This document shows positions 1,961 to 22,714 of a stretch of DNA of 64,000 bases, in pieces. Positions within the stretch are counted from its first letter, which is position 1. Each line of letters opens with the position of its first letter. A program made the translations under genes and the position numbers. The notes beneath the pieces are model-generated. The model saw only the letters and a program-made list of their open reading frames with translations, ran no database searches and was not told the origin of the DNA. The DNA lies in IMG/VR virus record IMGVR_UViG_3300023174_002543, positions 62,001-126,000 of that record; one strand, written 5' to 3'.

Positions 1961-3157
1961 ATGTCACAAGTTCTATTAGAAAGCCGTTGGGATGAGACTA
2001 AAGAAGCCCTACTTGAAGGTCTTAAAGGTACTCGCCGCTCAACAATGCAAGTTATTCTTGAGAATACTCGCAAATCACTTCTTGCTGAATCTTCAGCAGG
2101 CACAACAACTGCAGGTAACATCGCTACATTAAACCGTGTGATTCTACCAGTTATCCGTCGTGTAATGCCAACAGTTATCGCTAACGAGTTGGTAGGCGTT
2201 CAGCCAATGACAGGTCCAGTTGGTCAAATCCATACACTACGTGTACGTTATGCAGGTACTTTGAGTGATACTTCAGCTGCCGCAACATCAGTTCAAGCTG
2301 GTGAAGAAGCATTGAGTCCATTCAAAATTGCTCAAGCATACTCTACACAACGTAGTGACAGCAATGCATCAAGCATTTACACTGGTAATAACACTGCTAC
2401 CCTAGAAGGTAACGGTGGTAAGAATATCAGCGTACAAATCTTGAGACAAGCTGTTGAAGCTAAGTCACGTAAGTTACAAGCAAGATGGACATTTGAAGCT
2501 GCTCAAGACGCACAAAGCCAACATGGTATTGACGTTGAAGCAGAAATTATGGCCGCATTAGCACAAGAAATTACTGCTGAAATCGACCAAGAAATTCTAT
2601 TGTCATTAAGCACATTAGCTACACAAGAGTATACATACAATCAAGCAACAGTATCAGGTACTGCTACATTCGTTGGTGACGAACACGCTGCTTTAGCGGT
2701 TCTAATCAACCGTGCTGCAAACTTGATTGCACAACGCACACGTCGTGGTGCTGGTAACTGGGCAGTTGTATCACCTGCAGCATTGACAGTATTGCAATCA
2801 GCAACTACTTCAGCGTTTGCACGTACAACAGAAGGTACATTCGAAGCACCTACAAACACTAAGTTTGTTGGTACATTGAATGGTGCAATGCGTGTTTTCG
2901 TTAACACATATGCTCCAGACACACAAGCTGTTCTAGTTGGTTACAAAGGTTCATCAGAGACAGATGCAGCGGCATTCTATTGCCCATACATCCCATTGAT
3001 GAGTTCTGGTGTTGTTCTAGATCCATCAACATTCGAACCAGTCGTATCATTTATGACACGTTATGGTTATATCGAATTGACAAACACTGCATCATCTTTC
3101 GGTAATGCAGCAGATTACTTGAGCGAAATCGCTGTAAGTAACTTGACATTCTATTAA
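1961..3157 (+). CDS. gp23: T4-like major capsid protein
   Basis: VIRRVMPTVIANELVGVQPMTGPVGQIHTLR, VEAKSRKLQARWTFEAAQDAQSQHGIDVEAEI, EITAEIDQEIL, FYCPYIPL, SFMTRYG; AGGAG RBS upstream. Confidence 0.97.
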   Translation: MSQVLLESRWDETKEALLEGLKGTRRSTMQVILENTRKSLLAESSAGTTTAGNIATLNRVILPVIRRVMPTVIANELVGVQPMTGPVGQIHTLRVRYAGTLSDTSAAATSVQAGEEALSPFKIAQAYSTQRSDSNASSIYTGNNTATLEGNGGKNISVQILRQAVEAKSRKLQARWTFEAAQDAQSQHGIDVEAEIMAALAQEITAEIDQEILLSLSTLATQEYTYNQATVSGTATFVGDEHAALAVLINRAANLIAQRTRRGAGNWAVVSPAALTVLQSATTSAFARTTEGTFEAPTNTKFVGTLNGAMRVFVNTYAPDTQAVLVGYKGSSETDAAAFYCPYIPLMSSGVVLDPSTFEPVVSFMTRYGYIELTNTASSFGNAADYLSEIAVSNLTFY

Positions 3158-3181: not shown

Positions 3182-3212
3182 AAAAAAGAGCACTTCGGTG
3201 CTCTTTTTATTG
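3182..3212 (+). terminator. Intrinsic terminator after gp23, possibly bidirectional
   Basis: AAAAAGAGCAC-TTCG-GTGCTCTTTTT: 11-bp stem, UUCG tetraloop, A/T tracts on both sides. Confidence 0.9.
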
Positions 3213-3239
3213 GGCAATAATTACTATTACATAATAATG

Positions 3240-3246
3240 ATAAATA
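3240..3246 (+). promoter_or_regulatory. T4-type late promoter candidate ATAAATA
   Basis: Matches the T4 TATAAATA late -10 core; intergenic, after the terminator and 27 nt before the ATG at 3273. Confidence 0.7.
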
Positions 3247-3272
3247 CTCAATAGGATATATTCAAGGCAACC

Positions 3273-3983
3273 ATGGCAGCACCAGATCCATTCAATTCAG
3301 TAGGCGGTTATACAGTTGGAATCCCACCGCTACCAATTATTTCAGCTAATGGCAATATAAGTGCGGGTAATATCTCTGCTGATAATCTAACTATTACCTC
3401 TAATGTAACAGTCGGCGGAGATATTCGTGCGACCGGAGACATATATGGAGATACTTTTTATGGTAAGTTCGATGGCGCCATATCAGGAACATTAAATGTT
3501 CCGGGATTGTCTACTCAAATACTTTACAATACAAATGGTAATGCCGATGCTAGCCAAAATTTAACCTTTAATGCATCTACAAATACCCTTACTGTTCTAA
3601 ATGGATCTGTAACAGCTAATTCAATTACATTGGGTACAGGTCAAAATCAATTTAATACATCTTCTGTGTTTCGTTTAACTACATCTAGTACTGCACCTGA
3701 TCAAATATTAAATACAGTAAACGCATCTACAGTTTGTAGTATGGATTATATGATTATAGCAACTGATCCTGTAGCAAGCCGTAGACAAACAAGCAAAATT
3801 ATGGCTACTATATTAAACGGAAATGTTGAATATTATGAATACGGTACAATACAGGTACCTAATACAAGCCCGGGAGTCGCGGATCTTAAAGTGGCATATG
3901 TTGGTGGCAACGTTAATTTAACAGTAACACCTCTAACTAATAGTGTCAACTATAAAATAATGATAACAAGTTATAAAGAATAA
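3273..3983 (+). CDS. Virion fibre/decoration-like protein; N-terminal FNxxxG motif, C-terminal ~100-aa beta domain (here 'X')
   Basis: 236 aa; starts MAAPDPFNSVGGYTVG; C-terminal domain shared with 6026 and 10234. Confidence 0.6.
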   Translation: MAAPDPFNSVGGYTVGIPPLPIISANGNISAGNISADNLTITSNVTVGGDIRATGDIYGDTFYGKFDGAISGTLNVPGLSTQILYNTNGNADASQNLTFNASTNTLTVLNGSVTANSITLGTGQNQFNTSSVFRLTTSSTAPDQILNTVNASTVCSMDYMIIATDPVASRRQTSKIMATILNGNVEYYEYGTIQVPNTSPGVADLKVAYVGGNVNLTVTPLTNSVNYKIMITSYKE

Positions 3984-3994
3984 GGAAAACAAAA

Positions 3995-6013
3995 ATGGCA
4001 ATAAGAACATTTAATTCAGTGGCAGGTTTCTCAGTAGGTGAAGTACCAGAGACAATTATTACAACGACTGGTAACGTCACTACCGGTAACTTACTAACTG
4101 ACAATTTATATAAAGCAGACGGAGTAACTACATGGAATCTAAACGAAGCAGCAGGCTCTGTTAATCAGATTCAATTTAGTGACGGTAATGATTTAGATGC
4201 AAGCGCAAACTTAACATTTGTCGATGGTGCAAATCCAGTTTTAACTATCACAGGTAATGCTAACGTTACTAACGATTTGATTACATCAACTATTGTTACT
4301 GCCACCGGTGATCTTGTTATTGCTCCTGCAGCAGGTGGTGTTGTTAGTATTGCTGATACAGATGGAGGATCAACTGGTATTCAAGTTGGCACACCTACTG
4401 TAGGTAGTTTAACAAGCAATGCAGTTACTATGACTACTGAAACTAGTGTTACAGATGGCATTGCACAACTAAATGAAATCTTAGGTAAACTAGTTCCAGC
4501 TGCACCTCCTGATTTCCCTGCAAGTCAAACTATTGCAATTCAGAGTTTGTCATCATATCGTATGACTAACTTTACGCAAACTGATAATACTAGCACACAA
4601 GGTCATTCAGTAGCAGGTGGAACTACAGTTAACAAAATACGTAGAGCAAGTTCATATACTACTAACACTATAACAAATGCAGGTCCAGGCAATAACGGTA
4701 GAATTACTGCATATTTAAATGGTGTTGATGCTGGCAACGTGACATTAACTAATGCTCTTACTGGCGCAGGTACATATGGTAATTTAGTAATTACTAACAA
4801 TGTTGATTATAATGCAGTTAGCCCAAGCACACCTGCTGATTTTTGGAGTGTATTTTCAGCGACGGCAACTGGATCAGTAAGCCAAGGTTGGAATGAAGTT
4901 TATATACGTGATTCAGCAACTAATGCTAATACTAACGTAGTTCAATGGTATTATGATGCAAGTAATCCAGGTACACCGGTATTCAGTAGTACTTCAATTA
5001 CTGCACCAGTTAGTCCAACATTAACTTATTCAAGTACAATTCCACATTATGATTCTAGCAATCAATTTACTATTAATTTTAGTGTTAACAAACTAAGCGG
5101 TGATGTATATCCAACAAGCGATACATTTATAACAGGTACTGCAGGTGGCGCATTTAATGCCCCCGCTAGCGTAACATACGCAACGGCAGGTGTTACAACT
5201 CCATTAGCAAGAAATTTACATGTATCTAGTGGAACACAATCAGTAACAACTACTGCAGGTATTATTACTGGATTTGGTTCAAGTTCAGGTAGTCCTTCAG
5301 TAACGGTGAATAATAGTTATAATACTGCAAGTCAATCATTTGCTCCTGGTAAAACTGTACTATACAAGACAGGTACTGGTAGTTTAATGGAAGAAACTTC
5401 TATAACTATTGGTAGTACTATTGGTTCAGGTTCTGGATCAGCATCACGTATTGTTAATCCAGGTAGTGCAGATACACCGGCTATTTCAGCAAGTGCTTCT
5501 TTATTCAACAGTCAAACAGGCACGTTGCAAACATATGATGCAACAATTTCTGCCGGCGTACTAAAAAATGATGTGACTGATTATTCAACTGGATATTTTC
5601 CAGCTGGACCTAATTTAAGCGGTCAAGCTGCATCACAATATTTCACATTTAGATTTATTAGAACTTCTGTGAGTAAGTTTGATATTAAATGGACTGGTAC
5701 ACTTGCCGGATTATGGGTAGCATTACCAGGTAGTGTTATTGATACTAGCTCTACTTTGAACGGTTGGTTAACATTAGCTACTGCATATGCAGGAGCAGGA
5801 CAACCAGGTGCAGGAACTGGAGGTAACGGTAGTAACGGTGCTTCATTGGGTGGTACTGCTCCATTAGGAACGGCACAAACTAATAAGAGAATTACTGCAA
5901 CATTTGGTACTGCAAGTAGTTCAGGATCCGCAACAAATGAAATTTATGTAAGAATTAAATTAAACACTGGTCATTCAATCACGGCTCTATCATTAGAGAC
6001 AGCAAGCAATTAA
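3995..6013 (+). CDS. Virion structural protein, S/T/G-rich beta protein
   Basis: 672 aa; starts MAIRTFNSVAGFSVG; contains the NLYKADG..WNL..AAG..QIQF module shared with 6026 and 14047; AAGGA RBS. Confidence 0.6.
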   Translation: MAIRTFNSVAGFSVGEVPETIITTTGNVTTGNLLTDNLYKADGVTTWNLNEAAGSVNQIQFSDGNDLDASANLTFVDGANPVLTITGNANVTNDLITSTIVTATGDLVIAPAAGGVVSIADTDGGSTGIQVGTPTVGSLTSNAVTMTTETSVTDGIAQLNEILGKLVPAAPPDFPASQTIAIQSLSSYRMTNFTQTDNTSTQGHSVAGGTTVNKIRRASSYTTNTITNAGPGNNGRITAYLNGVDAGNVTLTNALTGAGTYGNLVITNNVDYNAVSPSTPADFWSVFSATATGSVSQGWNEVYIRDSATNANTNVVQWYYDASNPGTPVFSSTSITAPVSPTLTYSSTIPHYDSSNQFTINFSVNKLSGDVYPTSDTFITGTAGGAFNAPASVTYATAGVTTPLARNLHVSSGTQSVTTTAGIITGFGSSSGSPSVTVNNSYNTASQSFAPGKTVLYKTGTGSLMEETSITIGSTIGSGSGSASRIVNPGSADTPAISASASLFNSQTGTLQTYDATISAGVLKNDVTDYSTGYFPAGPNLSGQAASQYFTFRFIRTSVSKFDIKWTGTLAGLWVALPGSVIDTSSTLNGWLTLATAYAGAGQPGAGTGGNGSNGASLGGTAPLGTAQTNKRITATFGTASSSGSATNEIYVRIKLNTGHSITALSLETASN

Positions 6014-6025
6014 GGATAAAATATT

Positions 6026-8329
6026 ATGGCAATATCAGACGCACAAAAAGTAGACCTGTTATTTAAACAGGCATTCGGTGTAACTAAAACAGATACATCG
6101 ACTAATAAAAGTCCAAGTAATGAAGCTATTGCTAGTCCAGCGATAGTTCGCGGCGATAAAATTTGGAGTCAATCCGATCAGATACCAGGAACAGCGGCGG
6201 TCACTAGTGGAATTGTTGAACTTAAAAAGGTAGAATGTACCATTGATAATACTACTGTTCCTATAGGAGGTATTTACCCTACTTGGAAGACTGCATATAC
6301 TAATTGGATTCCTGTAGAATTTGGTCCTACATATTCTGTAAAAGTTTACGTTAATAATACTGGACAAAGTGCTGATCCTAGCGCAGGTGGTACGCAAATA
6401 TTTGATGCTGGTGTAGGTGGAGTAGGTGAATTTTACTTTAACTATAGCTCAGGCGTACTAAACTTTATTGGTGGCACGATACCTGCAGCATTGACAGGTA
6501 GTAAGAAGATTTATGTAGTTGGTTATAGATATATAGGTAGCGTTGGCTCTGCCGCACTACCATCAAATACTAATATTGGTAACATTAATATTACCGGTAA
6601 TACAATTAGTACTACTGACAATAATGGTAATACTGTTATAAGTGGTAATGGTACAGGTGGTGTAGAAATTGGTGGTACTGGTAATCTATATGCTACTAAC
6701 TTTATCGCTAGCGGTAATGTATATACTGATTCACTATTATATGCAAACGGTCAAGCATGGGACTTGCAAGAAGCAGCCGGTACTGATGGACAAATACAGT
6801 TCAACACCGGTGATAATTTTGCTGCAGATGCAAATTTATCATTCGACAGCGGTAACGCTAATCTAAAGATTATTGGTAATATTAACGTAGGTAGTACTGG
6901 TAATATAAAACTATACGGTAATGGCGCAATTAGTGCAACATCTATTAATGCTAATATAAGCGGTGACGTTGCTAATATTGGTGCTAACCTAAATGTATTG
7001 TACAATTATAATGGTAAGCTATCAAGTAATTCTACATTCCAATACACACCAGGATCAAATGCATTAACAGTTGGTAATAGTGTTACTAGTAACTACTTTA
7101 TTGGTAAATTTGATAGTACATCAAGTAACCAGTCAAATATTACTACATTAGGTAACTTAACAGTATTACAAGTTGGTAATACATCTACTACCGGCATTGT
7201 AAAACTTGACACAAATGGTAATGCTAATGCAGTTAACTTTAATGCATCAGGTGACATCAATGCAGTAAATGCAACATTCACTGGTAACTTAACTGTAACC
7301 GGTACAACTACATTCGTAAACACAACCGTTACTAGTATCAAAGATCCATTATTAACCTTAGGTGGTAATACTGACGGTGGTAATGCTACTTCATATGATG
7401 GTAAAGATAGAGGTTTAGTATTAGATAACTATACGAATGGTGTAACTCCTGGCCCATTAAATCAAGCATTCATTTGGAGAACATCTACTGGTCAATTTGA
7501 AGTTGGTGCAAACGTAGAAGTAACAGATAACGTTGTTGATATAAAACAATATGGAAATATAAAGGCATTAACATTCAAGGGTAATATTGATGCAACTAAT
7601 ATTGCAGGTACTCTTACTACTGCAAGTCAACCAAATATCACTAGTGTTGGTACATTGACCAGTGCAAATATTTCTGGATTGGCTAACGTAAGTCAATTAA
7701 AAGTTGGCGCAGTAATTTATCCCAATGTTGTAGGAACAGATGGTCAATATTTAAGAATAAATGCTACAAGTAATACAGTATATTATAGCAGTTTAGATAC
7801 AAGTAAAGTAGCAAATGGTACTACAGAGATAGAGTTATTAGAAGACAGTGATATAACATTTACAGTCGACGGAATAGCTAATGTTGTCATATTCAACACT
7901 GACGGAGCAAATATTGATGGTAACGCAAATGTATCAGGTAATGTAAATGCAATCGGCTCATTGAATGCGGATAGCGCAAATGTAACAAATGTTGTTATTG
8001 GTAATAGTAGCATTAGGGCCGCTACAGTAACTACTACTACAACATCATTGACTACCTTAGTAGCGTTAGACGCAGGTACATTTAGAGGTGTAGAATTTAT
8101 AATTAAGGGTGAAAATTCAACTGGTGGTAGATACAGTATTGCTACTATATTAGCAGTACACGACGGCGACAATCCGGTTGCAGTAGACTTTACTTCATAT
8201 GGATTAGTTAATTTAGGTGGTCAAACCGGAGTACTTACAGTAACCGGAGACGTAGATACAGTATATTTAAAAGTAACACCTAATAGCAATCAGTCAACTA
8301 TTTGGACAATTCAGTATAGACTAATCTAA
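6026..8329 (+). CDS. Fibre-like structural protein ending in domain X
   Basis: 767 aa; DP..G..DG.DRG module, TASQPNITSVGTL repeat, C-terminal X domain. Confidence 0.6.
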   Translation: MAISDAQKVDLLFKQAFGVTKTDTSTNKSPSNEAIASPAIVRGDKIWSQSDQIPGTAAVTSGIVELKKVECTIDNTTVPIGGIYPTWKTAYTNWIPVEFGPTYSVKVYVNNTGQSADPSAGGTQIFDAGVGGVGEFYFNYSSGVLNFIGGTIPAALTGSKKIYVVGYRYIGSVGSAALPSNTNIGNINITGNTISTTDNNGNTVISGNGTGGVEIGGTGNLYATNFIASGNVYTDSLLYANGQAWDLQEAAGTDGQIQFNTGDNFAADANLSFDSGNANLKIIGNINVGSTGNIKLYGNGAISATSINANISGDVANIGANLNVLYNYNGKLSSNSTFQYTPGSNALTVGNSVTSNYFIGKFDSTSSNQSNITTLGNLTVLQVGNTSTTGIVKLDTNGNANAVNFNASGDINAVNATFTGNLTVTGTTTFVNTTVTSIKDPLLTLGGNTDGGNATSYDGKDRGLVLDNYTNGVTPGPLNQAFIWRTSTGQFEVGANVEVTDNVVDIKQYGNIKALTFKGNIDATNIAGTLTTASQPNITSVGTLTSANISGLANVSQLKVGAVIYPNVVGTDGQYLRINATSNTVYYSSLDTSKVANGTTEIELLEDSDITFTVDGIANVVIFNTDGANIDGNANVSGNVNAIGSLNADSANVTNVVIGNSSIRAATVTTTTTSLTTLVALDAGTFRGVEFIIKGENSTGGRYSIATILAVHDGDNPVAVDFTSYGLVNLGGQTGVLTVTGDVDTVYLKVTPNSNQSTIWTIQYRLI

Positions 8330-8333
8330 TCTA

Positions 8334-8347
8334 ATAAGTATATAAAT
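8334..8347 (+). promoter_or_regulatory. Late promoter-like ATAAGTA / TATAAAT
   Basis: Intergenic ATAAGTA immediately followed by TATAAATG overlapping the start codon. Confidence 0.4.
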
Positions 8348-10232
8348 GGCAATCAAAAATTTTAATGTTGAACATGGCTTATCTGTCAATGATGTAACAA
8401 TCGTAGACAGTAATGCCAATGTTACTGCAAATACTTTAATATCTAATAACATTATTAGTACTAGCGGCACTAATAGTAATATTACCATCAATCCTGATGG
8501 TACCGGTATTATTGATGTAAGCAATAAAAAGATTAGTAATTTAGCTGAACCAATACTTGCAACAGACGCTGCTACAAAGGGTTATGTAGATGCGACTGCT
8601 CAAGGATTGAGTATTAAAAACTCAGTTCAATATGCAACAACTACTAATATTTTATTAGACGGAACAGTAACTACAATAGATGGTAAAACAGTAACTACCG
8701 GAGATCGTGTTCTAGTTAAAGACCAAACAGATAAAAGTAAAAATGGTATATACATAGCAAATACCACAGGTTCATGGACTCGTTCAGCAGATATGAATAT
8801 TGCTACTGAGATTTATGGTGCATTTACATTCGTTGAGACAGGTACTGAAAATCAATCAACTGGATGGGTAACTACTAATTCACCGCTAGATCCATTCACA
8901 TTGAATACAACTGATATAATATGGACACAGTTTAGTGGTACAGGTTCAGATATCAGTACAGATATAAACACGTTACATGTAACAGGTGGTACAAAAGATT
9001 ATGTATTGGCAGCTTCTGATAGTTTAGGTAACGTTGCTTTTGCTAATATTGCAAATTATTTCTTAGTTAAAACTGATATAACTACAGTGGTTGCAGGATC
9101 TACATTGGCCTTTACAATAGACTATGCTAATACTAGCTATCCCGGTGGAATATATACATTACAGCAATTGGGCCCGGTAAGTATGTCAATAAGCGACCAG
9201 TGGTCAATATCAGGTTCTAACGTTGGGACAACAAAAAACGCTTATGCAAATTATGTAGCAACTCAAGTTAATACTGCAAATGTAACAATAGCATTTACGT
9301 TAGCTAATGCTAATTTTAGTTTACAAACAACGGATACATTAACTATTGGTAGCACAGTAATAAATGACAGCAGTTCACCTAATCTAAGAACATTGTTATC
9401 TTCAATAAATGGAGTAAGTTCAGGTACTGTTACTATTCCAGCTACGAGTTTAAATGCAAACATAAACGCTAATGGGTTGAATACGGTAACAAACATAGTA
9501 AGCGTCAACCTTACTAATAGTAGAGGATCAACCGGTGCAGGTGTAAGTACGGCAAGTGGTACGAGTTTAGTGGCGACTGCTCCTACTGCATATAGTGTAA
9601 ACTCTATATCAGGTAGCTTCCCAAGTAGCAGTATACCATATTGGAGTTTAAATCAAACGTTTAACTGGACAGTGAGTACTACGGGCACTACTAGTGCGGG
9701 CAATTTAACATATAGCGGTGGCGCAATAAGCACTACCAGTTTATCAAGTGTGGGTGGCGCAAGCGGAACTAGCGGTAGCATAGATAGCACAAGTAGTTAT
9801 ACTATTACAACTAGTGATTATTATGGATTAGGATTAAATGGATATGGTAATAGAACTATTCCTAGTGCAGTAAATGGTACAGTAAGTGCTGCAACTAAAT
9901 ATTATCCGTTGTTTTGGAAGACAACTTCCAGTAGTGCATTACCAACCATAACAGTTAGTGATAGCCGTAATTCTAATAACTATGCTCTAGGGCAAGGTGC
10001 TACTACATCAACCACTGCTAGTAATTATCTTTGGTTAGCTATACCAAACGCAGGTAATGCTGCACCTTTGGCAAGTCATACCTTTAAGCATGTGTTTGGT
10101 GGATTTGATATTGTTGATACTCCTACGGTAACGGGCACACAATCTATATCTTCAGGCGGACAGAGTTACAATTATTCAATATATGGCTTTAGTGGTTTTA
10201 CGACAGCATCACTTATAATAACAACATCATAA
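8346..10232 (+). CDS. Tail-fibre-like protein with DAATKGYVD stalk, GDRVLVKDQ domain and C-terminal ~380-aa region 'Y'
   Basis: 628 aa; ISNLAEP..TDAATKGYVD and GDRVLVKDQT..KNGIY..WTRSAD are common phage fibre motifs; C-terminal region paralogous to 19408. Confidence 0.65.
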   Translation: MAIKNFNVEHGLSVNDVTIVDSNANVTANTLISNNIISTSGTNSNITINPDGTGIIDVSNKKISNLAEPILATDAATKGYVDATAQGLSIKNSVQYATTTNILLDGTVTTIDGKTVTTGDRVLVKDQTDKSKNGIYIANTTGSWTRSADMNIATEIYGAFTFVETGTENQSTGWVTTNSPLDPFTLNTTDIIWTQFSGTGSDISTDINTLHVTGGTKDYVLAASDSLGNVAFANIANYFLVKTDITTVVAGSTLAFTIDYANTSYPGGIYTLQQLGPVSMSISDQWSISGSNVGTTKNAYANYVATQVNTANVTIAFTLANANFSLQTTDTLTIGSTVINDSSSPNLRTLLSSINGVSSGTVTIPATSLNANINANGLNTVTNIVSVNLTNSRGSTGAGVSTASGTSLVATAPTAYSVNSISGSFPSSSIPYWSLNQTFNWTVSTTGTTSAGNLTYSGGAISTTSLSSVGGASGTSGSIDSTSSYTITTSDYYGLGLNGYGNRTIPSAVNGTVSAATKYYPLFWKTTSSSALPTITVSDSRNSNNYALGQGATTSTTASNYLWLAIPNAGNAAPLASHTFKHVFGGFDIVDTPTVTGTQSISSGGQSYNYSIYGFSGFTTASLIITTS

Positions 10233-10233
10233 T

Positions 10234-12510
10234 ATGGCAGCAGCAACCCTTACCTTCCCCTCACAAACGTTACTTAAGAACGTTGTTGTTCCAGTTGACG
10301 GAACAGATGCTGCTACCAAAGAATATGTAGATGGTAGAACAGGCGCCGGCAGTGTTGCTGCAGCCGGTTCTAATACACATATTCAATTTAATGATGCCGG
10401 TAGTATAGGTGCCAGTGCAAATTTAACTTTTAATAAATCAGGTAATATACTTACTATTACCGGTAACTTAGTATCAAGTAACGCTAATCTTGGTAATCTA
10501 GCAACAGCGAACTATATAAACATTGCAAATAATTTATCAGTCGCCGGCGATGCAAATATTACTGGTAACTTGACAGTACTTGGTACAGTATCCTACATTG
10601 AATCTACTACTACATATGTTACAGATCCTTTATATGAAATAGGCGGAGGTTCGCAGGGTACAACTTTATCAACGGATGATAATAAAGATCGCGGTACTAT
10701 ACTTCACTATTTTGACACTACTCCTATAGACGCTTTTATAGGTTGGGATAATAGTAATGCTGAATTTGCTATTGCGAGTAACGTTTCTGTAACTGATAAT
10801 ATTGTAACTTATAATAATTTTGGTAATATCAGAGTAGGTAATATTTTTGCCGGAAACGTAGTAAATGCTAACTTCTATACCGGTGACGGTGGACTACTTT
10901 CTAATATTATAGCATCTAGTGGTACTGCAACTACAGTCACGGCAAGCACACAACCAAATATTACTAGTCTCGGCAACTTAGTAGAATTGACAGTAGGTCA
11001 AGGATTATCTAATGTATACATTAATGGTTTTGGTAATATTACGGTTGGTAATAAGATAACTACTACCAATTTAACTGTAACCGGTAACTCTATGTTACAA
11101 GGAAATACAGAATTTCAACAAATTGTAACTCTAACATCCTCAGCGAGTAGTACAAATTCTAGCACCGGTGCATTGATATTAACATTAGGTGGTTTAGGTG
11201 TATATGGTAATATACATTCAGGAATGGGAGTCACTGGAGTTACTTTAACTGGTAATATTACTACCGCAAGTCAACCTAATATTACCTCTTTAGGTAATCT
11301 AGTAAGTTTAATAGTAGGAAACTCTACTGCAAATAGTACGTTTGGTAATGGAACTATAACTCTAACAGGTGCAGGTAATATTACAGGTGGTAATCTAGTA
11401 AGTGCTAATTATTTTACCGGCACATTAACAACCTCAAGTCAGCCAAATATAACATCAGTCGGGACGTTAAATAACACAACATTAGGCGCAAGTAACTCAT
11501 TATCAGGTGGTAATCTAGTAAGTGCTAATTATTTTACCGGCACATTAACAACTGCAACTCAACCAAATATTACAAGTTTAGGAACACTAGTAAACGTAAC
11601 GGTGTCCGGTACATCTAATTTAGGAAATGTAGGAAATGTTAGGATTACCGGTGGTAGTTCAGGCCAATACTTAAAAACAGACGGTACTGGAAATTTAAAT
11701 TGGGCTACAGTAGATACATCAAGACTAGCGAACGGTACTACTGAAATAGAGTTATTAGAAGACGGTAATATTAATTTTACCGTAGGAACACAAACAAATT
11801 CAGTTATTTTTGTGGATGATGGTAGTGTTGTTCTTGGTTCAGGTACCGGTGGAAATATCGAAGGTGCCAATGTTGTAAATGCAAATACTTTAGCAGCAAG
11901 TAATACAATAACACGAAATGGAAGAAACGTACCAACATTTGTTAGTTCAGGCACAATGCCAACTAATCCGTTATTAGGTGATGAATGGTACGATCAGGAT
12001 GACGACAGAGTTTATCAATACATCTATGATGGTGCAAATTATAATTGGGTAGAGATAAGCAGTGGTTACATCGCTGCCAATGTAGCTGCTCAAACCGGAA
12101 CATTAGTAGTAAGAGATAGTAATGCCAACGTATATGCCAACACTATACATGCCAATGCTTTAAGCGTTACTGGTACTGCTAAAATGGGTAGTATAGTCAG
12201 CGCAGGAAATGGACAGTCAGTATCTAATTCAACTGAAACTATGATTGATACCTTTCCCAAAACTTTATACAGGTCTGCTAAATACATTATATCAGCAAGA
12301 AATGATGATGGTTTCGAAGTGGCAGAAATGCTACTAATACATGACAATATGATTAGTTTTATACAAACATATGGTGATGTTAGTACTGGGACAGTACAAG
12401 ATATTGTAACTTTTAGTAGCAATATTGTAAGCGGAAACGTCTGTCTATATGCAACAGGGAGTAATTCAAATACATACGTAAATTTAGTATCAACTTATGT
12501 AACTGATTAA
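10234..12510 (+). CDS. Fibre-like structural protein ending in domain X
   Basis: 758 aa; DAATKEYVD, QFN..ASANLTF, DP..DRG module, four QPNIT repeats, GDEWY module, X domain. Confidence 0.65.
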   Translation: MAAATLTFPSQTLLKNVVVPVDGTDAATKEYVDGRTGAGSVAAAGSNTHIQFNDAGSIGASANLTFNKSGNILTITGNLVSSNANLGNLATANYINIANNLSVAGDANITGNLTVLGTVSYIESTTTYVTDPLYEIGGGSQGTTLSTDDNKDRGTILHYFDTTPIDAFIGWDNSNAEFAIASNVSVTDNIVTYNNFGNIRVGNIFAGNVVNANFYTGDGGLLSNIIASSGTATTVTASTQPNITSLGNLVELTVGQGLSNVYINGFGNITVGNKITTTNLTVTGNSMLQGNTEFQQIVTLTSSASSTNSSTGALILTLGGLGVYGNIHSGMGVTGVTLTGNITTASQPNITSLGNLVSLIVGNSTANSTFGNGTITLTGAGNITGGNLVSANYFTGTLTTSSQPNITSVGTLNNTTLGASNSLSGGNLVSANYFTGTLTTATQPNITSLGTLVNVTVSGTSNLGNVGNVRITGGSSGQYLKTDGTGNLNWATVDTSRLANGTTEIELLEDGNINFTVGTQTNSVIFVDDGSVVLGSGTGGNIEGANVVNANTLAASNTITRNGRNVPTFVSSGTMPTNPLLGDEWYDQDDDRVYQYIYDGANYNWVEISSGYIAANVAAQTGTLVVRDSNANVYANTIHANALSVTGTAKMGSIVSAGNGQSVSNSTETMIDTFPKTLYRSAKYIISARNDDGFEVAEMLLIHDNMISFIQTYGDVSTGTVQDIVTFSSNIVSGNVCLYATGSNSNTYVNLVSTYVTD
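11384..11552 (+). repeat. 49-bp perfect direct repeat, 120-bp period
   Basis: CAGGTGGTAATCTAGTAAGTGCTAATTATTTTACCGGCACATTAACAAC at 11384-11432 and 11504-11552. Confidence 0.85.
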
Positions 12511-12542
12511 AATAAAAATAGCAATGGGGATTGTTTGGAACT

Positions 12543-13094
12543 ATGGCTAATAAGTATTTTAACGTAAGACAAGGTCTCCAGACCGGAAATATAACGTTAG
12601 ACGCCACGACGGGAAATGCCAATGTAGGCAATTTGTCCACTACGGACTTGAACGTAGCTGGAAACTTAAATTCGAACCTAATACCTAAGGTCGCATCTGG
12701 CGTACCTTCAGTTCTGTCATTAGGTACCAATCTACAACGATTCAAAGATTTATATCTGTCAGGAAATGTCAATCTTCCTGGTGGACAAACACTCACTGGC
12801 AATACGGATACTGCTAGTTTTTCTGGGAATGTATATACCCCAGGTGCACTAACAGCAAACGTCATAAATGCCAACACTATAGCAGTAAATACAGAATTTA
12901 CGCTAAATAGTACTATAAATTCAACTTCTACTGATACTGGTGCATTTACAACTATGGGCGGAATCGGAGTGAAGAAGGATGTAACAGTGGGGGGTGCTAT
13001 TAATTTAGCCAACTTTGCTGTTACAGGAACAACAGTTAGAAGCAGCATTTACCATGATGATACTTCTAACTCAATAACGTTTAAATTTAATTGA
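12543..13094 (+). CDS. Short fibre-like connector protein ending SITFKFN
   Basis: Track starts at TTG 12531; ATG 12543 gives MANKYFNVRQG, which matches the paralogous N-termini; C-terminus matches that of 14047. Confidence 0.6.
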   Translation: MANKYFNVRQGLQTGNITLDATTGNANVGNLSTTDLNVAGNLNSNLIPKVASGVPSVLSLGTNLQRFKDLYLSGNVNLPGGQTLTGNTDTASFSGNVYTPGALTANVINANTIAVNTEFTLNSTINSTSTDTGAFTTMGGIGVKKDVTVGGAINLANFAVTGTTVRSSIYHDDTSNSITFKFN

Positions 13095-13107: not shown

Positions 13108-14004
13108 ATGGTAGCACCAACAACAATCGGAGCAAGATTATTAAATGATGGTACACTCTACACAGTGGGTACATTTGATGACACCGGCACTACAACAACC
13201 GGACATTCAATCACAAAAGAACATATATTTGCTGATGAATTAGACGAATTAGCACTAAATACCGGTGCCCCATCTGGAGGCTCGGTGTTGCTTAATGGAT
13301 CTAGTCAACGCATAGATGTCACTGGGTCAGAGAGTTTTATGTTTGGCACACAGGACTTCACTATTGAAGGATGGTTCGTATTATCGTCAACTTCATACGC
13401 ACGACTATGGTGTTTCCCAGACGGAGATAACGTAGAAGCCGTAAATGGTACCTTATATTACTGGAATGGTACAGGTAGTGTTTTGACCGCAGGTACGGGA
13501 TCAGCTCCGCAAGGTCGTTGGTTTCATGTAGCACTAGTAAAACGTAACGGTGTAGCAAAAGTATATCTAAACGGTGTAGCAGTAATTACTGATAATAGTC
13601 CATATAATTCAATATCATCAAGACCATTAAGTATTGGCGGTGAAGTAGGTCTTAGTACAGTTGGACAAGATCCAACTGCAGGATCAAGAGACGGTTGGTT
13701 AAATGGCAACGTAACAAATTTTCGTATAGTAAAGGGTCTAGCAGTTTATACAAGTAATTTTAGTACTGCTTATAACCCTCTTACTTCAATACCAAACACA
13801 GTTTTATTACTAAATGTAGTAAATTCTGGTAATTTAGTAACAGATAGTTCGTCACAGAATCAAACTGTTACCAATATTGGCAGTGCGACTTATAGCGCAC
13901 TAACTCCGTTAAGTACATACTTCAACGGCGCAATGAAACAATTGAAAAATGGTGCATTGCTACTAGCAAATGAGTTAGTTGAAACAGACTCAGTATTATC
14001 ATAA
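13108..14004 (+). CDS. Small core protein 'Z' carrying one inserted LamG/concanavalin-A-like domain
   Basis: DFTIEGW, WFHVALVKRNG, VTNFRIVKGLAVYTSNF; N- and C-terminal flanks align with the 76-aa ORF at 19149. Confidence 0.75.
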   Translation: MVAPTTIGARLLNDGTLYTVGTFDDTGTTTTGHSITKEHIFADELDELALNTGAPSGGSVLLNGSSQRIDVTGSESFMFGTQDFTIEGWFVLSSTSYARLWCFPDGDNVEAVNGTLYYWNGTGSVLTAGTGSAPQGRWFHVALVKRNGVAKVYLNGVAVITDNSPYNSISSRPLSIGGEVGLSTVGQDPTAGSRDGWLNGNVTNFRIVKGLAVYTSNFSTAYNPLTSIPNTVLLLNVVNSGNLVTDSSSQNQTVTNIGSATYSALTPLSTYFNGAMKQLKNGALLLANELVETDSVLS

Positions 14005-17000: not shown

Positions 17001-19137
17001 AGATAACGTTGTTACAGTTCCAGGAACTACTGATGCTGAAAAATTAGCAAACTTGGCTGATTTGCGTTTAGCAAACATTTATGCATACAATGCAAACTTT
17101 GGTGGTGTCGTATTCTCACAAGGTAATGTTACATTAGGTGCTGGATCATTCTTGAACGGTAATGTTAATGGTAATATCAGTGGTACTATTACTGTAACAG
17201 GTGGTAATGGTGCAATTCAATTTGCAAATGCAACCAATGCAATGACATCTAGTTCTAATTTGAATTTCAATGATTCTCTTGCTAGATTAACACTAGGTAA
17301 TGGAACAACTACCGGTGAACTTAAGGCTAATGTAGTAACTGCAAGTTATGTAGCAGGTACATTGACAACTGCAAGTCAGCCAAATGTAACTTCAGTTGGT
17401 ACACTAACAAGTTTAGATGTTACTAATGCAGTAACTGCAGGTTCATTCAAGTCTGACACATATCAGTATGCAAACGGTAGTCCAATCGACTTCCAAACTG
17501 CTGCAGGTAGTGCAACACAGATCCAGTTCAAGTCATCAAGTGGTAACGACTTAGATGCAAGTGCAAACTTAACATTTAATTCATCTACTAGTAACTTAAC
17601 AGTTAATGGTAACATTATTACTGGTGCAGGTTCTGGTGGTAATATCAGTGGTGCTAACGTAGTTAGCGCAACATTGTTCAGTGGTTCTGGTGCTAACTTA
17701 ACAAATATTAACGGTGCAAACGTAAGTGAAGTTGCATTAGCAACTAATGTTACTGCAAGCGCACAAGGTAATATTACTAGCGTTGGTACATTAACTGGAT
17801 TGACAATTGTTGCTAACGGTGACATTACTCTAAGCGGAGTAGACTCAAATATCAGTGGTGCTAATCTAATAAGTGCTGGTTACTTTAGTGGTAATGGTAG
17901 CGCATTGACTGGTGTAACTGCTACGTCAATGAATGCAGCTAATTTGACTGGTTCAACATTGTCAAGCAATGTAACAGGTTCTAGTTTAACTAGTGTTGGT
18001 ACATTAACAAGTTTAACTGTAACTGGTTCTATCACATCATCTACTGGTGACTTAGTTGCAACACTTGGTAATGTAAGTGGTAATGTTATTACAGGTACTA
18101 CATTAACTGGTACATTAAGTACTGCAGCACAACCAAACATTACAAGTGTTGGTACATTAACAAGTTTAACTGTTGCTAATACAGGTGGTTCTGGTAACAT
18201 TACTGCTGATAATGTATTTGCTAATGCAGGTATTGTAAGTGGTCAATACTTATACGGTAATGGTATAAACATCTCTAACATTGCTGGTGCTAACGTAAGT
18301 GGTTATGTACAGAATGCTAATATTGCAAATGTTGCTTACGCAGTGGCTGCAGGTAACATCACAGGTACTACATTGAACAGCAACATTGTAACTTCTAGTT
18401 TAACAACTGTTGGTACATTGGGTAGTTTAAGTGTAACTGCTACTATTACTGCTGGTAATGTACTTGCTAGTAATATTGGTAATGCAACAACAATCTTACG
18501 TGGTGATGGTGCTAATATTACAGGTGTAACAGCTAGTGCAATTGATGCAGGTAATTTAACTGGTCAAACATTATCAAGCAATGTAATTTACAGTAGCTTA
18601 ACATCTGTTGGTACACTAAGTGGACTAACTTCTAACGGTACTGTAAACTTTACTACTGCAAGTAACGTATCATTGGGCCCAGTCGCTAATGTTCATATTA
18701 CAGGCGGTACAACTGGTCAATATCTACAAACTGATGGTTCTGGTACATTAAGTTGGTCAACTGTCTCATTATCAAATATCAATAATGGTACAAGTAATGT
18801 CTCAGTAGCTAACAACGGTAACGTAACTGCCGCAATAGCCGGTAGTAATGTCATCACTATCGCTACAGCTGGATTAACTGTAACAGGTATCATTGAAGCA
18901 ACAGGAAATATTCTTGGTAATAATATTACTAGCAATAATTTCATTACTGCTAATGGTACAACTGCTGCAACAAGTGCAGCAACTGGTGCAATTAAATCAG
19001 AAGGGGGTATATCTGCTAAAGGTAACATCTACACAGGTGATGCATTAGGTTTCGCACATGGTTCTGGTAACACAGATAGTGCTGCATACATCAAATATAA
19101 CGCAACTGCAGGTAGCATAGACTTTATCTTCAATTAA
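14047..19137 (+). CDS. Long repetitive fibre protein (1696 aa)
   Basis: Starts MAKLKSGTRVYG; two DP..DRG modules, several QFN modules and QPNIT-type repeats, pentapeptide repeat; ends SIDFIFN. Confidence 0.7.
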   Translation: MAKLKSGTRVYGDATVDQTLTVGNITISGNLVVQGQTTSVDSTVTRVEDPIFEIGGGEAGAALTSNDGKERGILMHYYDGAVKDAFMGWHTSNARFEFGAIATESSGNITVGTYGNLKAGVFFGDGGGLSNIVGGNVSGDVAAANYANYAGTVTGSAQSNITSTGTLTSLTVSGTSNVAAISSNGAITTSGSITANGASSNLTIGTSAANNSVANIYGDLNVTGNLNGTFTGTIGAKGSNTHVQFNDNGQQNGVAGFTFDKSTSTVSIANIVLAGAAGTANFKGDINLTGTSQTIAGANIKVDASTQLELEGGTANITLTSSNVKLATSGGTANLDNTGKLTVSGAADFAGGNFTVTTAGNIDAKRGDFTSIKNTGLTDNQLVFTTGNVLGGNAGLTYASNTLSANNFATTNANITGNITTKYNSGKLLTTDVGGNLIESNVSFSSNELTVANANITNTATIANLNITSLTTTGGLLFTGGASGNVTESATLTFTAITNTLSTTNITASGNVVANAITSNNLTATQLVFAGASKELTSDSHLTFTTVSNTLSTTNITASGNIIGARVTANNVADSEIAYANIDHTLVGASSFTYNAGTSTLSAPNVVSSSSIIGAKVSANNIADTQIAYANVDHTLVGSSSFTYTPLTGTLAANNVSVTSNVTAANVFASTVGNSATMLYGNGYNITGVVASSANAETLTGTYINAGVTGSSLTSLGTMNNITMGGANSISGGNLLSANYVTGTLTTAAQPNITSLGNLTAANVTGNLQAGGILTDNLYYANGGVWDLQQAAGDTSEIQFNNGDNFAASANFTFNSGSSTLTVTGTGNITTVNATTVTATTGNITTVNATTGNITTVNGTTGNITTVNATTVTATTGNITTVNTTDIVASGNANITGWLKAADTVITGNLTVTGTTTSVNTTTSQLTDPLLDLGNGANGAALTTNDAFDRGLVMHTRVAGTNKDLFMGWDTSNAEFVMAKNVTVSDNVVTVPGTTDAEKLANLADLRLANIYAYNANFGGVVFSQGNVTLGAGSFLNGNVNGNISGTITVTGGNGAIQFANATNAMTSSSNLNFNDSLARLTLGNGTTTGELKANVVTASYVAGTLTTASQPNVTSVGTLTSLDVTNAVTAGSFKSDTYQYANGSPIDFQTAAGSATQIQFKSSSGNDLDASANLTFNSSTSNLTVNGNIITGAGSGGNISGANVVSATLFSGSGANLTNINGANVSEVALATNVTASAQGNITSVGTLTGLTIVANGDITLSGVDSNISGANLISAGYFSGNGSALTGVTATSMNAANLTGSTLSSNVTGSSLTSVGTLTSLTVTGSITSSTGDLVATLGNVSGNVITGTTLTGTLSTAAQPNITSVGTLTSLTVANTGGSGNITADNVFANAGIVSGQYLYGNGINISNIAGANVSGYVQNANIANVAYAVAAGNITGTTLNSNIVTSSLTTVGTLGSLSVTATITAGNVLASNIGNATTILRGDGANITGVTASAIDAGNLTGQTLSSNVIYSSLTSVGTLSGLTSNGTVNFTTASNVSLGPVANVHITGGTTGQYLQTDGSGTLSWSTVSLSNINNGTSNVSVANNGNVTAAIAGSNVITIATAGLTVTGIIEATGNILGNNITSNNFITANGTTAATSAATGAIKSEGGISAKGNIYTGDALGFAHGSGNTDSAAYIKYNATAGSIDFIFN
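16525..16704 (+). repeat. Coding tandem repeat of 12 pentapeptides (GNITT/VNATT/VTATT)
   Basis: Read directly from the translation; 15-nt periodicity in the DNA. Confidence 0.85.
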
Positions 19138-21784: not shown

Positions 21785-22714
21785 ATGGCATTAATATTCC
21801 CCGCACCAGCCCAGATTAAGAACTTATTAGCGCCGACTGATAATACTGATGCCGCAACCAAATTATATGTTGATAATCAAGTAAGTGGAGCAACTGTCAG
21901 TGTATCAGGTAGTAATACACAATTACAATTTAACAACGCCGGTTCTTTTGGTGCAAGTAGTAATTTAACATTTAATAGTTCAACTAATCTATTAACAGTT
22001 ACTGGTAATATTGCAACCAGTAATTTATCAGTAACAGGTAATGTGTCATTTACTGGTGCAAATGTAAGTTTAGGTAATATAAGTAATCTACGTATAAGTG
22101 GTGGTACTGCTGATTATGTTCTAAAAACAGATGGAACAGGCAATCTAAGTTGGACTGCACAAAGCGTAGGAACATTAACTGCTGACGTAGATGCATTTAC
22201 TGGTGATGGAAGCAATGTTGCATTCACATTAGCAAATACACCTGCAGGTGAAAACTTCACAATGGTTGCCGTACAAGGTGTACTACAGCCTAAAACAACT
22301 TATTCATTAAGTGGTAATGTATTAACATTTACTAGCGCACCCCCAAGCACAGCAGTAGTTGAAGTCACTACGTTTGGTGGCTCTGTTATGTCAGGTGGCG
22401 GTGGCGGCGGAACTAGTCCTGCGTTAACTTGGAACATTGCAAGTAGTAATGCAACAATGACTGCAAACAATGGATACTTTGTAGACACATCAAGTGGTGC
22501 AAAAACAATGACATTACCAACTAGTGCAACGTTAGGTGATACTATTCGTATCAATGACTTGGCTGGATCTTTCTCTACAAACAACTTAACAGTAGCAAGA
22601 AATGGTCATAAGATTCAGGGTATTGCACAAGATTTATTAGTAGATGTAGAACAAAGTAGTTTTGGTTTAGTATACAGTAACAGCACATATGGCTGGAAAG
22701 TATTGGAGTTATAA
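21785..22714 (+). CDS. Fibre protein with FTGDG domain and a C-terminal domain resembling T4 gp34 N-terminal repeats
   Basis: DAATKLYVD; VDAFTGDGSNVAFTL; GYFVDTSSGAKTMTLPT..LGDTIRIND..GSFSTNNLTVARNGHKIQG..GW. Confidence 0.6.
   Translation: MALIFPAPAQIKNLLAPTDNTDAATKLYVDNQVSGATVSVSGSNTQLQFNNAGSFGASSNLTFNSSTNLLTVTGNIATSNLSVTGNVSFTGANVSLGNISNLRISGGTADYVLKTDGTGNLSWTAQSVGTLTADVDAFTGDGSNVAFTLANTPAGENFTMVAVQGVLQPKTTYSLSGNVLTFTSAPPSTAVVEVTTFGGSVMSGGGGGGTSPALTWNIASSNATMTANNGYFVDTSSGAKTMTLPTSATLGDTIRINDLAGSFSTNNLTVARNGHKIQGIAQDLLVDVEQSSFGLVYSNSTYGWKVLEL

What the first reader, a model, noticed from the sequence alone, without database searches (positions are those of the whole stretch)
3655..12590. 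Junction type 1: C-terminal domain X is always followed by a MAxxxFNxxxG N-terminus
Seen: 3273, 6026 and 10234 end in a related ~100-aa domain (SMDYMI/GVEFII/SAKYII ... YEYG/TSYG/QTYG ... GNVNLTVTP/DTVYLKVTP/GNVCLYATG). The next genes start MAIRTFNSVAG, MAIKNFNVEHG and MANKYFNVRQG. The first gene of the array (3273, MAAPDPFNSVGG) carries the same motif but follows gp23. Inference: the FN peptide inserts into domain X, and the first one docks on a partner encoded elsewhere, possibly on the capsid.
Basis: partly seen in the sequence, partly recalled or inferred. Interest (0 to 1): 0.7.

Follow-up and report, generated by a model that had tools for sequence, protein, structure and literature searches.

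The report
Socket-and-plug joints linking phage fibre proteins
In this uncultivated giant T4-like phage, three fibre proteins end in a domain like the T4 gp9 fibre socket and the next gene always starts with a conserved peptide predicted to dock on it, so neighbouring genes probably encode fibre segments that snap together in gene order.

Summary
Genes 3273, 6026 and 10234 end in one domain family, called X here. Pairwise BLAST does not see this, but iterated profiles do, and all hits lie at the extreme C-terminus. The genes after them (3995, 8346, 12543) start with an M-A-x-x-x-F-N-x-x-x-G module, called FN here. FN occurs four times in the 367-kb genome, always at a gene start.

In 85 related metagenomic loci, 185 X-ending genes (140 distinct junctions) obey the same rule. 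I found one true exception.

[quoted passage not shown] A 3+3 complex model places FN residues 2-10 and 15-18 on the most conserved surface of the X trimer. It scored 0.93 against 0.00 for the best control.

A fourth X domain lies far outside the window, in a 270-aa gp9 homologue. The genome therefore holds four sockets and four plugs. The first array protein more likely docks on this baseplate connector than on the capsid.

The FN module shows no detectable homology to the T4 gp34 N-terminus. X also occurs without FN in other phages.

Verdict: a new serial variant of a known attachment principle. It is supported by conservation and modelling, not by experiment.

The parts
3273..3983 (+). Gene 1 (236 aa), an adaptor or link protein: FN plug, short shaft, X1 socket
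   Evidence: ORF. More than 200 homologues of about 230 aa. AF2 model pLDDT 88, with a low-confidence N-terminus of 1-20.
3273..3329 (+). FN plug of gene 1, subtype DPFNSxGGYTVGIPP
   Evidence: F7, N8, G12, I17, P18 and P19 are invariant in 40 homologues. Profile hit E 2.3e-16.
3645..3980 (+). X1 socket domain (residues about 125-236)
   Evidence: HMM 1e-36. Foldseek to T4 gp9 1qex E 2.3e-5. VIA Z 11.4 and 10.4 to tailspike and baseplate C-terminal domains. Modelled interface residues 174, 178, 184-194, 197, 200-201, 204, 206-209.
3995..6013 (+). Gene 2 (672 aa): FN plug (3995-4048), then from about residue 129-148 a domain of phrog_8578, shared with phiCbK-like phages; no X
   Evidence: Residues 2-10 and 15-18 contact X1 in the complex model. 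Residues 1-16 are nearly invariant.
6026..8329 (+). Gene 3 (767 aa): N-terminal domain of phrog_9417 (shared with phiCbK-like phages), shaft, X2 socket (7997-8326)
   Evidence: X2 1.6e-27.
8346..10232 (+). Gene 4 (628 aa): FN plug (8346-8399), subtype KNFNxxxGLSV; no X
   Evidence: E 9.4e-15. It starts 16 nt after the stop codon of gene 3.
10234..12510 (+). Gene 5 (758 aa): no FN; shaft; X3 socket (12181-12507)
   Evidence: X3 3.2e-30.
12543..13094 (+). Gene 6 (183 aa): FN plug (12543-12596), subtype KYFNVxxGLxTGNITLD; ends ITFKFN
   Evidence: E 5e-13. Homologues in relatives start at the same ATG.
3183..3212 (.). GC-rich hairpin with flanking A and T runs between gp23 and gene 1, followed by GATAAATA at 3241
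   Evidence: It separates the fibre array from the capsid gene.

Best explanation
Domain X is a trimeric beta-sandwich homologous to the C-terminal domain of T4 gp9, the domain on which the T4 long tail fibre sits coaxially. In this clade of jumbo phages the same socket has been copied onto the C-terminal end of successive fibre proteins.

The first 16-18 residues of the next gene product (M-A-I-K/R-x-F-N-x-x-x-G-F/L-S/T-V-G) act as the plug. Three plugs from the next trimer lie on the conserved surface of the X trimer, each touching two subunits.

Gene order therefore mirrors assembly order. The inferred chain starts with the gp9 homologue, which is encoded about 280 kb from the array at G000:C1:346233-347045 on the minus strand. 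It continues through gene 1 (X1) to gene 2, then through gene 3 (X2) to gene 4, then through gene 5 (X3) to gene 6.

Three socket subtypes pair with three plug subtypes, which could fix the order of assembly. The shafts between joints vary freely in length.

What is shown: the homology of the X domains, the gp9-like fold, the colinearity rule and its conservation, and the 4-to-4 count. What is supported only by a model: the X1-plug contact. What is inferred: that gene 1 docks on the gp9 homologue, that the other two joints (gene 2 to gene 3, gene 4 to gene 5) also connect, and that the whole forms one linear fibre and not a branched one.
For: - X homology.
- Fold: the Foldseek top hit is T4 gp9 1qex at E 2.3e-5. 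VIA gives Z 11.4, 10.4 and 9.8 to tailspike and baseplate C-terminal domains. The X HMM aligns to gp9 residues 181-268 at iE 0.003.
- The genome's own gp9 homologue: phrog_677 'baseplate wedge tail fiber protein connector' at 2.4e-6. BLASTP to the T4 gp9 N-terminus gives E 3e-4. hhalign of its C-terminus against the X profile gives probability 97.5%, E 7e-12. Its AF2 model's top Foldseek hit is 1qex at 5.5e-6. It is present once in each of the 5 relatives checked.
- Colinearity.
- Subtype pairing of X1, X2 and X3 with distinct plug subtypes, kept even where links are duplicated as in L003.
- Constant order X1, X2, X3 with segment lengths of 350-2642 aa.
- Complex model: score 0.93 with best control 0.00. 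The tool's mark was reached by 58 of 80 solved complexes and 2 of 110 mismatched pairs. Runs agree in 100% of contacts and partner pLDDT is 80.
- Interface residues are more conserved than the rest of X, 0.81 against 0.67, p 0.018.
- The plug is disordered in the monomer model.
- Literature: long tail fibres attach coaxially to the gp9 C-terminal domain (PMC3004832), via the N-terminus of gp34 (PMC10253068).
Against: - No experiment, and only one complex model, made with my own alignments. No non-cognate X/FN pair was modelled, so specificity is untested.
- The pass could partly reflect the model's memory of related solved assemblies.
- The pairing of subtypes is confounded by shared descent and conserved synteny.
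- The FN profile does not match the T4 gp34 N-terminus.
- gp9-C-like domains at tailspike C-termini are usually read as trimerisation or glycan-binding modules (PMC10253068; bioRxiv 10.64898/2026.05.12.724579).
- X occurs in tandem arrays, and without FN neighbours, in other phages.
- One X-ending gene (L007:12907-16401) is followed by a gene without the plug.
- Genes 2 and 4 lack X and genes 3 and 5 lack FN, so a continuous chain needs two further joints that I did not test.
Confidence: 0.65

Rival explanations
1. X is only a C-terminal trimerisation, folding or glycan-binding tip, as proposed for gp9-C-like domains of tailspikes. Each X-ending protein is then an independent fibre. The FN peptides all anchor to some other common site on the baseplate or a hub fibre. 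The X-then-FN adjacency would be inherited gene order, not a physical joint.
For: The best structural matches after gp9 are C-terminal domains of capsule-degrading tailspikes. The literature treats this ECOD group as a C-terminal receptor-binding or trimerisation module (PMC10253068; bioRxiv 10.64898/2026.05.12.724579). X occurs without FN in L103. X folds fully without the peptide.
Against: The complex model scores 0.93 against 0.00 for the best control, with the interface on conserved residues. The plug subtype tracks the upstream X subtype and is not uniform, as a common anchor would predict. Gene 1 is only 236 aa, too short to be a useful receptor fibre, and is strictly conserved. There are four sockets for four plugs in the genome. 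T4 gp9 itself is a socket (PMC3004832).
Confidence: 0.2
2. One reading: the chain starts on the capsid, as a head fibre, because gene 1 follows gp23. The phiCbK-like cassette would fit this, since phiCbK carries a head filament (that fact is from memory).
For: Gene 1 lies directly after gp23 in all relatives. Gene 2 and gene 3 contain domains shared with phiCbK-like phages.
Against: A hairpin with a T-run and a late-promoter-like box separate gp23 from gene 1. In L003 a homing-endonuclease-like gene sits between them. An unpaired X socket exists in the gp9 homologue. No X-like domain is detected in gp23 or elsewhere. The phiCbK-like genes are annotated tail proteins where they are annotated at all, and relatives lack the cassette altogether.
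Confidence: 0.1
3. Chance or compositional artefact: low-complexity fibre sequence rich in N, T, S and G produces look-alike termini.
For: Pairwise BLASTP finds no similarity between the X domains. The proteins are compositionally biased.
Against: Profile E-values of 1e-13 to 1e-36. A confident globular fold. Shuffles give 0.07-0.2 motif hits against 4 observed. The rule holds in 140 distinct junctions.
Confidence: 0.01

Closest known systems
T4 gp9 (baseplate-fibre connector) with the N-terminus of the long-tail-fibre protein gp34
   Same: A trimeric C-terminal eight-stranded beta-sandwich serves as a coaxial socket for the N-terminus of the next trimeric fibre protein. The fold is matched, and the genome has its own gp9 homologue carrying an X domain.
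   Different: In T4 the socket occurs once, on a baseplate protein, and the genes (9 and 34) are far apart. Here the socket is repeated at the end of three fibre proteins, the plug-bearing gene always comes next, and there are three matched subtypes. The plug shows no detectable sequence homology to the gp34 N-terminus.
T4 long tail fibre gp34-gp35-gp36-gp37
   Same: Consecutive genes encode consecutive segments of one fibre, joined non-covalently end to end. The total length is comparable (3244 aa here against 2908 aa in T4).
   Different: The T4 joints use different, unrelated interfaces and a monomeric kneecap protein, gp35. Here one joint type is reused serially.
gp10-like XD branching domains of CBA120 TSP4/TSP2 and RaK2 gp528
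   Same: Conserved modules let multi-protein receptor-binding complexes assemble from neighbouring genes in large myophages (PMC10253068, PMC8825819).
   Different: XD domains are N-terminal and lateral, and they create branches. X is strictly C-terminal in this clade. No XD structure appears among the fold matches.
C-terminal gp9-like domains of tailspikes (Acinetobacter phages Fri1, AM24, APK09; RaK2 gp529)
   Same: The same fold at the same C-terminal position of trimeric tail proteins (PMC10253068).
   Different: In those proteins it is the free distal end, read as a trimerisation or glycan-binding module, with no plug-bearing downstream gene.

Membership tests
gp9 C-terminal domain-related fold (T4 gp9 residues 167-288; ECOD 3386.1.1 as named in bioRxiv 10.64898/2026.05.12.724579) | Eight-stranded antiparallel beta-sandwich at the C-terminus of a tail protein | tested here: met
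   AF2 pLDDT above 90 over residues 128-236. Foldseek 1qex E 2.3e-5, probability 1.0. VIA Z 11.4, 10.4 and 9.8 over 104-112 residues.
gp9 C-terminal domain-related fold | Sequence-level homology to gp9 proteins | tested here: met
   hhalign of the X profile against the C-terminus of the genome's own gp9 homologue family gives probability 97.5%, E 7e-12. The direct match to T4 gp9 is weak (iE 0.003 in a 9-protein set). The profile search of PDB sequences found nothing.
gp9 C-terminal domain-related fold | Forms a trimer | not testable with these tools
   The 3+3 model is confident (pLDDT 91 for X), but oligomeric state was imposed, not tested.
gp9-type fibre socket (function) | Binds the N-terminus of the next fibre protein coaxially | tested here: inconclusive
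   The complex model scores ipSAE 0.93 against 0.00 for the best control. This is a prediction only.
T4 gp34 N-terminal attachment region | Sequence homology of the FN module to the gp34 N-terminus | tested here: not met
   The FN profile finds no match in the T4 genome. hmmsearch --max scores gp34 at -2.4 bits, and not at its N-terminus. The F-x4-G-L spacing is shared by eye only.
T4_gp9_10_N (PF07880), the gp9/gp10 N-terminal domain | N-terminal I-D-x-G-x-x-N-D-G-T-G-D-x-L-R-x-x-F-x-K-I-N-x-N-F motif | tested here: not met
   The array proteins have no such hit. Only the distant 270-aa gp9 homologue matches, and weakly (E 0.003, below the cut-off; phrog_677 at 2.4e-6). The array proteins are therefore not gp9 or gp10 orthologues. 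They share only the C-terminal domain.
Any Pfam or PHROG family for X or FN | A curated model covering the domain | tested here: not met
   No Pfam or PHROG hit covers the X or FN regions.

The most novel reading that the evidence does not exclude
A clade of uncultivated jumbo phages builds its long fibres from a kit of interchangeable segments joined by three orthogonal socket-plug pairs. All three derive from the gp9 fibre socket. Gene order encodes assembly order. Segments can be lengthened, duplicated, fused or split without touching the joints, and in this window one was split by insertion of a foreign two-gene cassette. If the pairs really are orthogonal, they would be a natural, portable system for ordered assembly of trimeric fibres.
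Probability: 0.4. Interest if true: 0.75.

Novelty: new variant of a known kind. Interest (0 to 1): 0.6.

Why it matters
How multi-protein phage fibres find their correct order of assembly is understood in only a handful of cultured phages, and each of those uses idiosyncratic joints. This case offers a simple, repeated and sequence-recognisable joint: an X socket at a C-terminus and an FN plug at the next N-terminus.

The X family has 7264 cluster representatives at E 1e-3 or better in metagenomes. None was detected in cultured phage records, neither with three of the array proteins against 50,697 records nor with the X and FN profiles against the closest cultured relatives by capsid protein.

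The joint gives a rule for annotating fibre arrays in uncultivated jumbo phages. It assigns a function to a domain usually written off as a trimerisation tip. It also makes one idea directly testable: that gp9-type sockets were reused serially to extend and re-wire host-recognition fibres. Matched socket-plug subtypes could be useful parts for engineering fibres in laboratory phage systems.

Tried and rejected
- Pairwise BLASTP between the three X domains found nothing. Profiles were needed.
- Megablast and tblastn of the array against 50,697 phage records: no hit for gene 1. The other genes hit only shaft repeats or the phiCbK-like cassette.
- Pfam on all array proteins: nothing for X or FN.
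- Profile search of PDB sequences with the X alignment: nothing.
- I recalled from memory that the T4 gp34 N-terminus (MAEIKREFRAEDGL...) resembles the FN module. I fetched T4 and confirmed the gp34 sequence, but the FN profile does not match it. I dropped homology and kept only the functional analogy.
- Pfam scan of the 270-aa gp9 homologue gave no family. PHROGs, BLASTP, hhalign and fold search were used instead.
- The TATAAATA late-promoter scan shows no enrichment in the window (7 found against 14.6 expected).
- The sigma-70 and terminator scans are at or below shuffle expectation, apart from the hairpin at 3183-3208.
- The first run of the representative-library search was lost and re-run.
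- I did not attempt covariation statistics between X and FN residues, because the pairs are phylogenetically non-independent.
Full report
CONTEXT. The window is bases 62001-126000 of a single 367,104-bp virus record with 36.5% G+C. It opens with a T4-type head module. The prohead protease is at 183-818, the scaffold at 830-1930 and the major capsid protein at 1961-3157. The capsid protein is 65-68% identical to those of jumbo myophages such as Vibrio phage 2.275.O, PA5oct, Phosso and the large E. coli phages. After it come more than 40 kb of large genes for fibre-like and tail-like proteins. No cultured phage record resembles the array at the DNA level, and gene 1 has no tblastn hit among 50,697 phage records.

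THE OBSERVATION. Genes 3273-3983 (236 aa), 6026-8329 (767 aa) and 10234-12510 (758 aa) end in a beta-rich stretch of about 100 aa carrying the Y-G and G-N-V-x-L-x-V-T-P motifs. Genes 3995, 8346 and 12543 begin with M-A-x-x-x-F-N-x-x-x-G. For the last one the ATG at 12543 is the start shared by homologues in relatives. Gene 3273 also begins with this motif.

The similarity of the three C-terminal domains, called X here, is too weak for pairwise BLASTP. An HMM seeded on the C-terminal part of the gene-1 family and iterated over 86 sequences (the window plus loci L001-L085) picks up 6026 at 8e-20 and then 10234 at 2.6e-13. It picks up nothing else in the window.

The N-terminal motif occurs four times in six frames of the whole genome, against 0.07-0.2 expected from shuffles, and all four are at these gene starts. 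A 35-position profile of the module, called FN here, finds the same four sites at E 1e-13 to 1e-16, with the next best at 0.28.

CONSERVATION. The 236-aa protein has more than 200 metagenomic homologues of about 230 aa. I collected 85 related loci. Everywhere the order is gp23, then the roughly 230-aa gene, then the fibre genes.

There are 186 complete X-ending genes with at least 120 nt downstream (the three in the window and 183 in those loci). In 185 of them X ends at the last residue, and 164 are followed within 200 nt, most often 11-25 nt, by a start codon and the motif. Of the other 22, 21 are motif variants (MAIKALNSVGG, MTTKNFVVKNG, MVTKKFSSRSG, MVTKKFITKAG) or contig ends. Only L007:12907-16401 is followed by an unrelated N-terminus.

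In the converse test, the strict motif at a genuine N-terminus is found only after X (168 cases) or on the first gene after gp23. There is one exception, at L041:12963. All other regex hits are internal to long ORFs such as the portal. After removing duplicates, 140 distinct junctions remain.

The sockets fall into three subtypes in a constant order. X1 ends ...YKIMxTSYKE, X2 ends ...WTTQYRxI and X3 ends ...NLVxTYVTD. Each is followed by its own plug subtype. X1 is followed by FNSxGGFSVGE, X2 by KKFN(A/S)xxG(L/F)SVG, and X3 by K(Y/N)FNVxxG(L/I)xTGNITLD. This pairing holds even where a link is duplicated, as in L003. The segments between joints vary from 350 to 2642 aa.

WHAT X IS. An AlphaFold2 model of gene 1 (mean pLDDT 88) has a poorly defined N-terminus, with pLDDT 54-59 over residues 1-20. 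Its C-terminal beta-sandwich is very confident. Foldseek's best PDB match is T4 gp9 (1qex, E 2.3e-5), followed by the C-terminal domains of Acinetobacter and Klebsiella tailspikes and a baseplate protein of Klebsiella phage KP1. The independent aligner gives Z 11.4, 10.4 and 9.8 over 104-112 residues to the same set. The X HMM aligns, weakly, to residues 181-268 of T4 gp9.

In T4, gp9 is the 'socket protein'. The long tail fibres attach coaxially to its C-terminal domain (PMC3004832), via the N-terminus of gp34 (PMC10253068).

A FOURTH SOCKET. Searching all ORFs of the genome with the X HMM finds one more copy, in a 270-aa ORF at G000:C1:346233-347045 on the minus strand, about 280 kb from the array (E 2.5e-7). 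Its N-terminus carries the gp9/gp10 signature. The evidence for that is phrog_677 'baseplate wedge tail fiber protein connector' at 2.4e-6, 42% identity over 31 residues to T4 gp9 (E 3e-4), and PF07880 at 0.003, below the cut-off. Its C-terminal family profile matches the X profile at 97.5% probability, E 7e-12. Its AlphaFold2 model again has 1qex as the best match, at 5.5e-6 and aligned over the whole length. This is the phage's gp9 homologue.

Each of the five relatives checked has exactly one full-length copy of it, away from the array. Its downstream gene has no FN module. The genome therefore holds four sockets (gp9 homologue, X1, X2, X3) and four plugs (genes 1, 2, 4, 6). Three pairs are adjacent. 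The left-over socket and the left-over plug are the gp9 homologue and gene 1.

This makes the baseplate connector the most economical partner for gene 1, not the capsid. A hairpin with a T-run at 3183-3212, followed by GATAAATA, separates gp23 from gene 1. In L003 a homing-endonuclease-like gene lies between them. Adjacency to gp23 therefore carries little weight. I could not model the pair of gp9 homologue and gene 1, because only one complex job was allowed.

THE DOCKING MODEL. I folded three copies of X1 (gene 1 residues 100-236, 40-row alignment) with three copies of the gene-2 N-terminus (residues 1-60, 40-row alignment). The three runs scored ipSAE 0.93, 0.93 and 0.92, and the best of three controls scored 0.00. 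In the tool's calibration that mark was reached by 58 of 80 solved complexes and 2 of 110 mismatched pairs. The runs agree in 100% of their contacts and the partner's pLDDT is 80.

The tool warns that the calibration holds only roughly here, because I used my own alignments and multi-copy chains. It also warns that a pass may reflect likeness to solved complexes.

The contacts are plug residues 2-10 and 15-18 with X1 residues 174, 178, 184-194, 197, 200-201, 204 and 206-209. Each peptide touches two X subunits. These X residues include the invariant V185, E189, G191 and G201 and the nearly invariant T192, I193, P200, D204 and V207. The interface is more conserved than the rest of X (0.81 against 0.67, one-sided Mann-Whitney p 0.018). 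Plug residues 1-16 are nearly invariant and conservation falls off after residue 16.

X is fully folded without the peptide. 'Docks on an inter-subunit surface' therefore describes the model better than 'inserts into the domain'.

ARCHITECTURE. Proteins carrying both FN and X act as links. In L003 four links follow one another, of 230, 736, 1145 and 711 aa, before a terminal 434-aa protein.

In the window two links are split. L001 gene 2 (577 aa) and L005 gene 2 (462 aa) each align with residues 1-91 of window gene 2. They then align with residues 227-767 (L001) or 361-767 (L005) of window gene 3, all within a single polypeptide. In the window, most of gene 2 after its first 91 residues and the first 226 residues of gene 3 are extra. 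The domains they carry (phrog_8578 in gene 2 from about residue 129-148, phrog_9417 in residues 1-177 of gene 3) are homologous to two adjacent genes of phiCbK-like Caulobacter and Brevundimonas phages. Likewise, the 8346 plus 10234 pair corresponds in position to the single 1145-aa gene 3 of L003.

If those inserted halves bind each other, the fibre stays continuous. If they do not, genes 2 and 4 are side branches ending in their own distal domains. I did not test this.

HOW FAR THE FAMILY REACHES. A profile search of 1.84 billion cluster representatives finds 7264 proteins with X at E 1e-3 or better, and 3245 at 1e-10 or better. Among the best 150, all 103 single-domain proteins carry X at the extreme C-terminus. 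Fifty-one have an FN-like N-terminus. Forty-seven carry 2-10 X domains.

One such protein sits on a marine contig (L103). It has a gp9/gp10-type N-terminus and ten tandem X domains. The gene after it again has a gp9/gp10-type N-terminus and one C-terminal X, and there is no FN. X is therefore a broader module. The X-then-FN rule belongs to the fibre arrays of this clade.

T4 and the closest cultured relatives by capsid protein give no profile match to X or FN. The same searches do ring in the window's own genome and its relatives.

COMPARISON WITH WHAT IS KNOWN. The principle is the T4 gp9-gp34 attachment: a gp9-type trimeric socket receiving the N-terminus of a fibre protein. Three things differ here.
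- The socket is reused serially on the fibre proteins themselves.
- Socket gene and plug gene are strictly colinear.
- There are three matched subtypes.

The plug is not demonstrably homologous to the gp34 N-terminus. The T4 sequence was checked and the profile test was negative. The system is also distinct from the N-terminal gp10-like XD branching domains of CBA120 and RaK2 (PMC10253068, PMC8825819). I found no paper describing such a serial arrangement, but the library is not exhaustive.

VERDICT. The docking interpretation is well supported by conservation and one controlled model, but not by experiment. The capsid suggestion is replaced by a better candidate, the gp9 homologue. This is a new variant of a known kind, of moderate to good interest.

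Noticed in passing
window 4268-6013 and 6026-6703: Most of gene 2 beyond residue 91 (its phrog_8578 domain matches from about residue 129-148 on) and the first 226 residues of gene 3 (phrog_9417 over residues 1-177) match two adjacent genes of phiCbK-like Caulobacter and Brevundimonas giant siphophages, and also Agrobacterium, Salicola and Sinorhizobium jumbo phages. In relatives L001 and L005 the flanking parts form one uninterrupted gene. A foreign two-gene cassette therefore seems to have been inserted in frame and split a fibre gene.
   Followed up: partly
window 12940-13094 and 18980-19137: The 183-aa protein (12543) and the 1696-aa protein (14047) share a C-terminal domain of about 50 aa ending I-[TD]-F-[KI]-F-N. 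A Laminin_G_3 protein (13108-14004) lies between them. This may be a second joint type or a shared terminal module.
   Followed up: no
window 3183-3250: A GC-rich hairpin flanked by A and T runs lies just after gp23, followed by GATAAATA, one mismatch from the T4 late-promoter box. The fibre array looks like its own transcription unit.
   Followed up: partly
L103:8104-14372: A marine metagenome contig encodes a 1574-aa protein with a gp9/gp10-type N-terminus and ten tandem X domains. The next gene encodes a 514-aa protein with the same N-terminus type and one C-terminal X, and there is no FN plug. Forty-seven of the 150 best X-family representatives carry 2-10 X domains.
   Followed up: partly
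window 24000-26000, 30000-32000, 40000-42000, 44000-46000: Four islands of 42-43.5% G+C stand out against a 36-38% background. Two coincide with paralogous genes matching phrog_2295 (23961-24851 and 30513-31664).
   Followed up: no
window 21785-22714: In this 309-aa protein, residues 200-306 match N-terminal regions of many tailspike and tail proteins and the 'tail fiber protein proximal subunit' family (phrog_972). It may be another attachment module in the same fibre region.
   Followed up: no
L003:9089-9841 and L004:5666-6418: A 250-aa gene with a faint NUMOD3 hit, resembling a homing endonuclease, sits between gp23 and the first array gene in one lineage. An HNH gene lies upstream in the head module.
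   Followed up: no
L006:1230-2616: In one variant contig the second array gene is broken into two ORFs of 304 and 170 aa, while the near-identical contig L005 has it intact at 462 aa. This is either a frameshift or an assembly difference.
   Followed up: no
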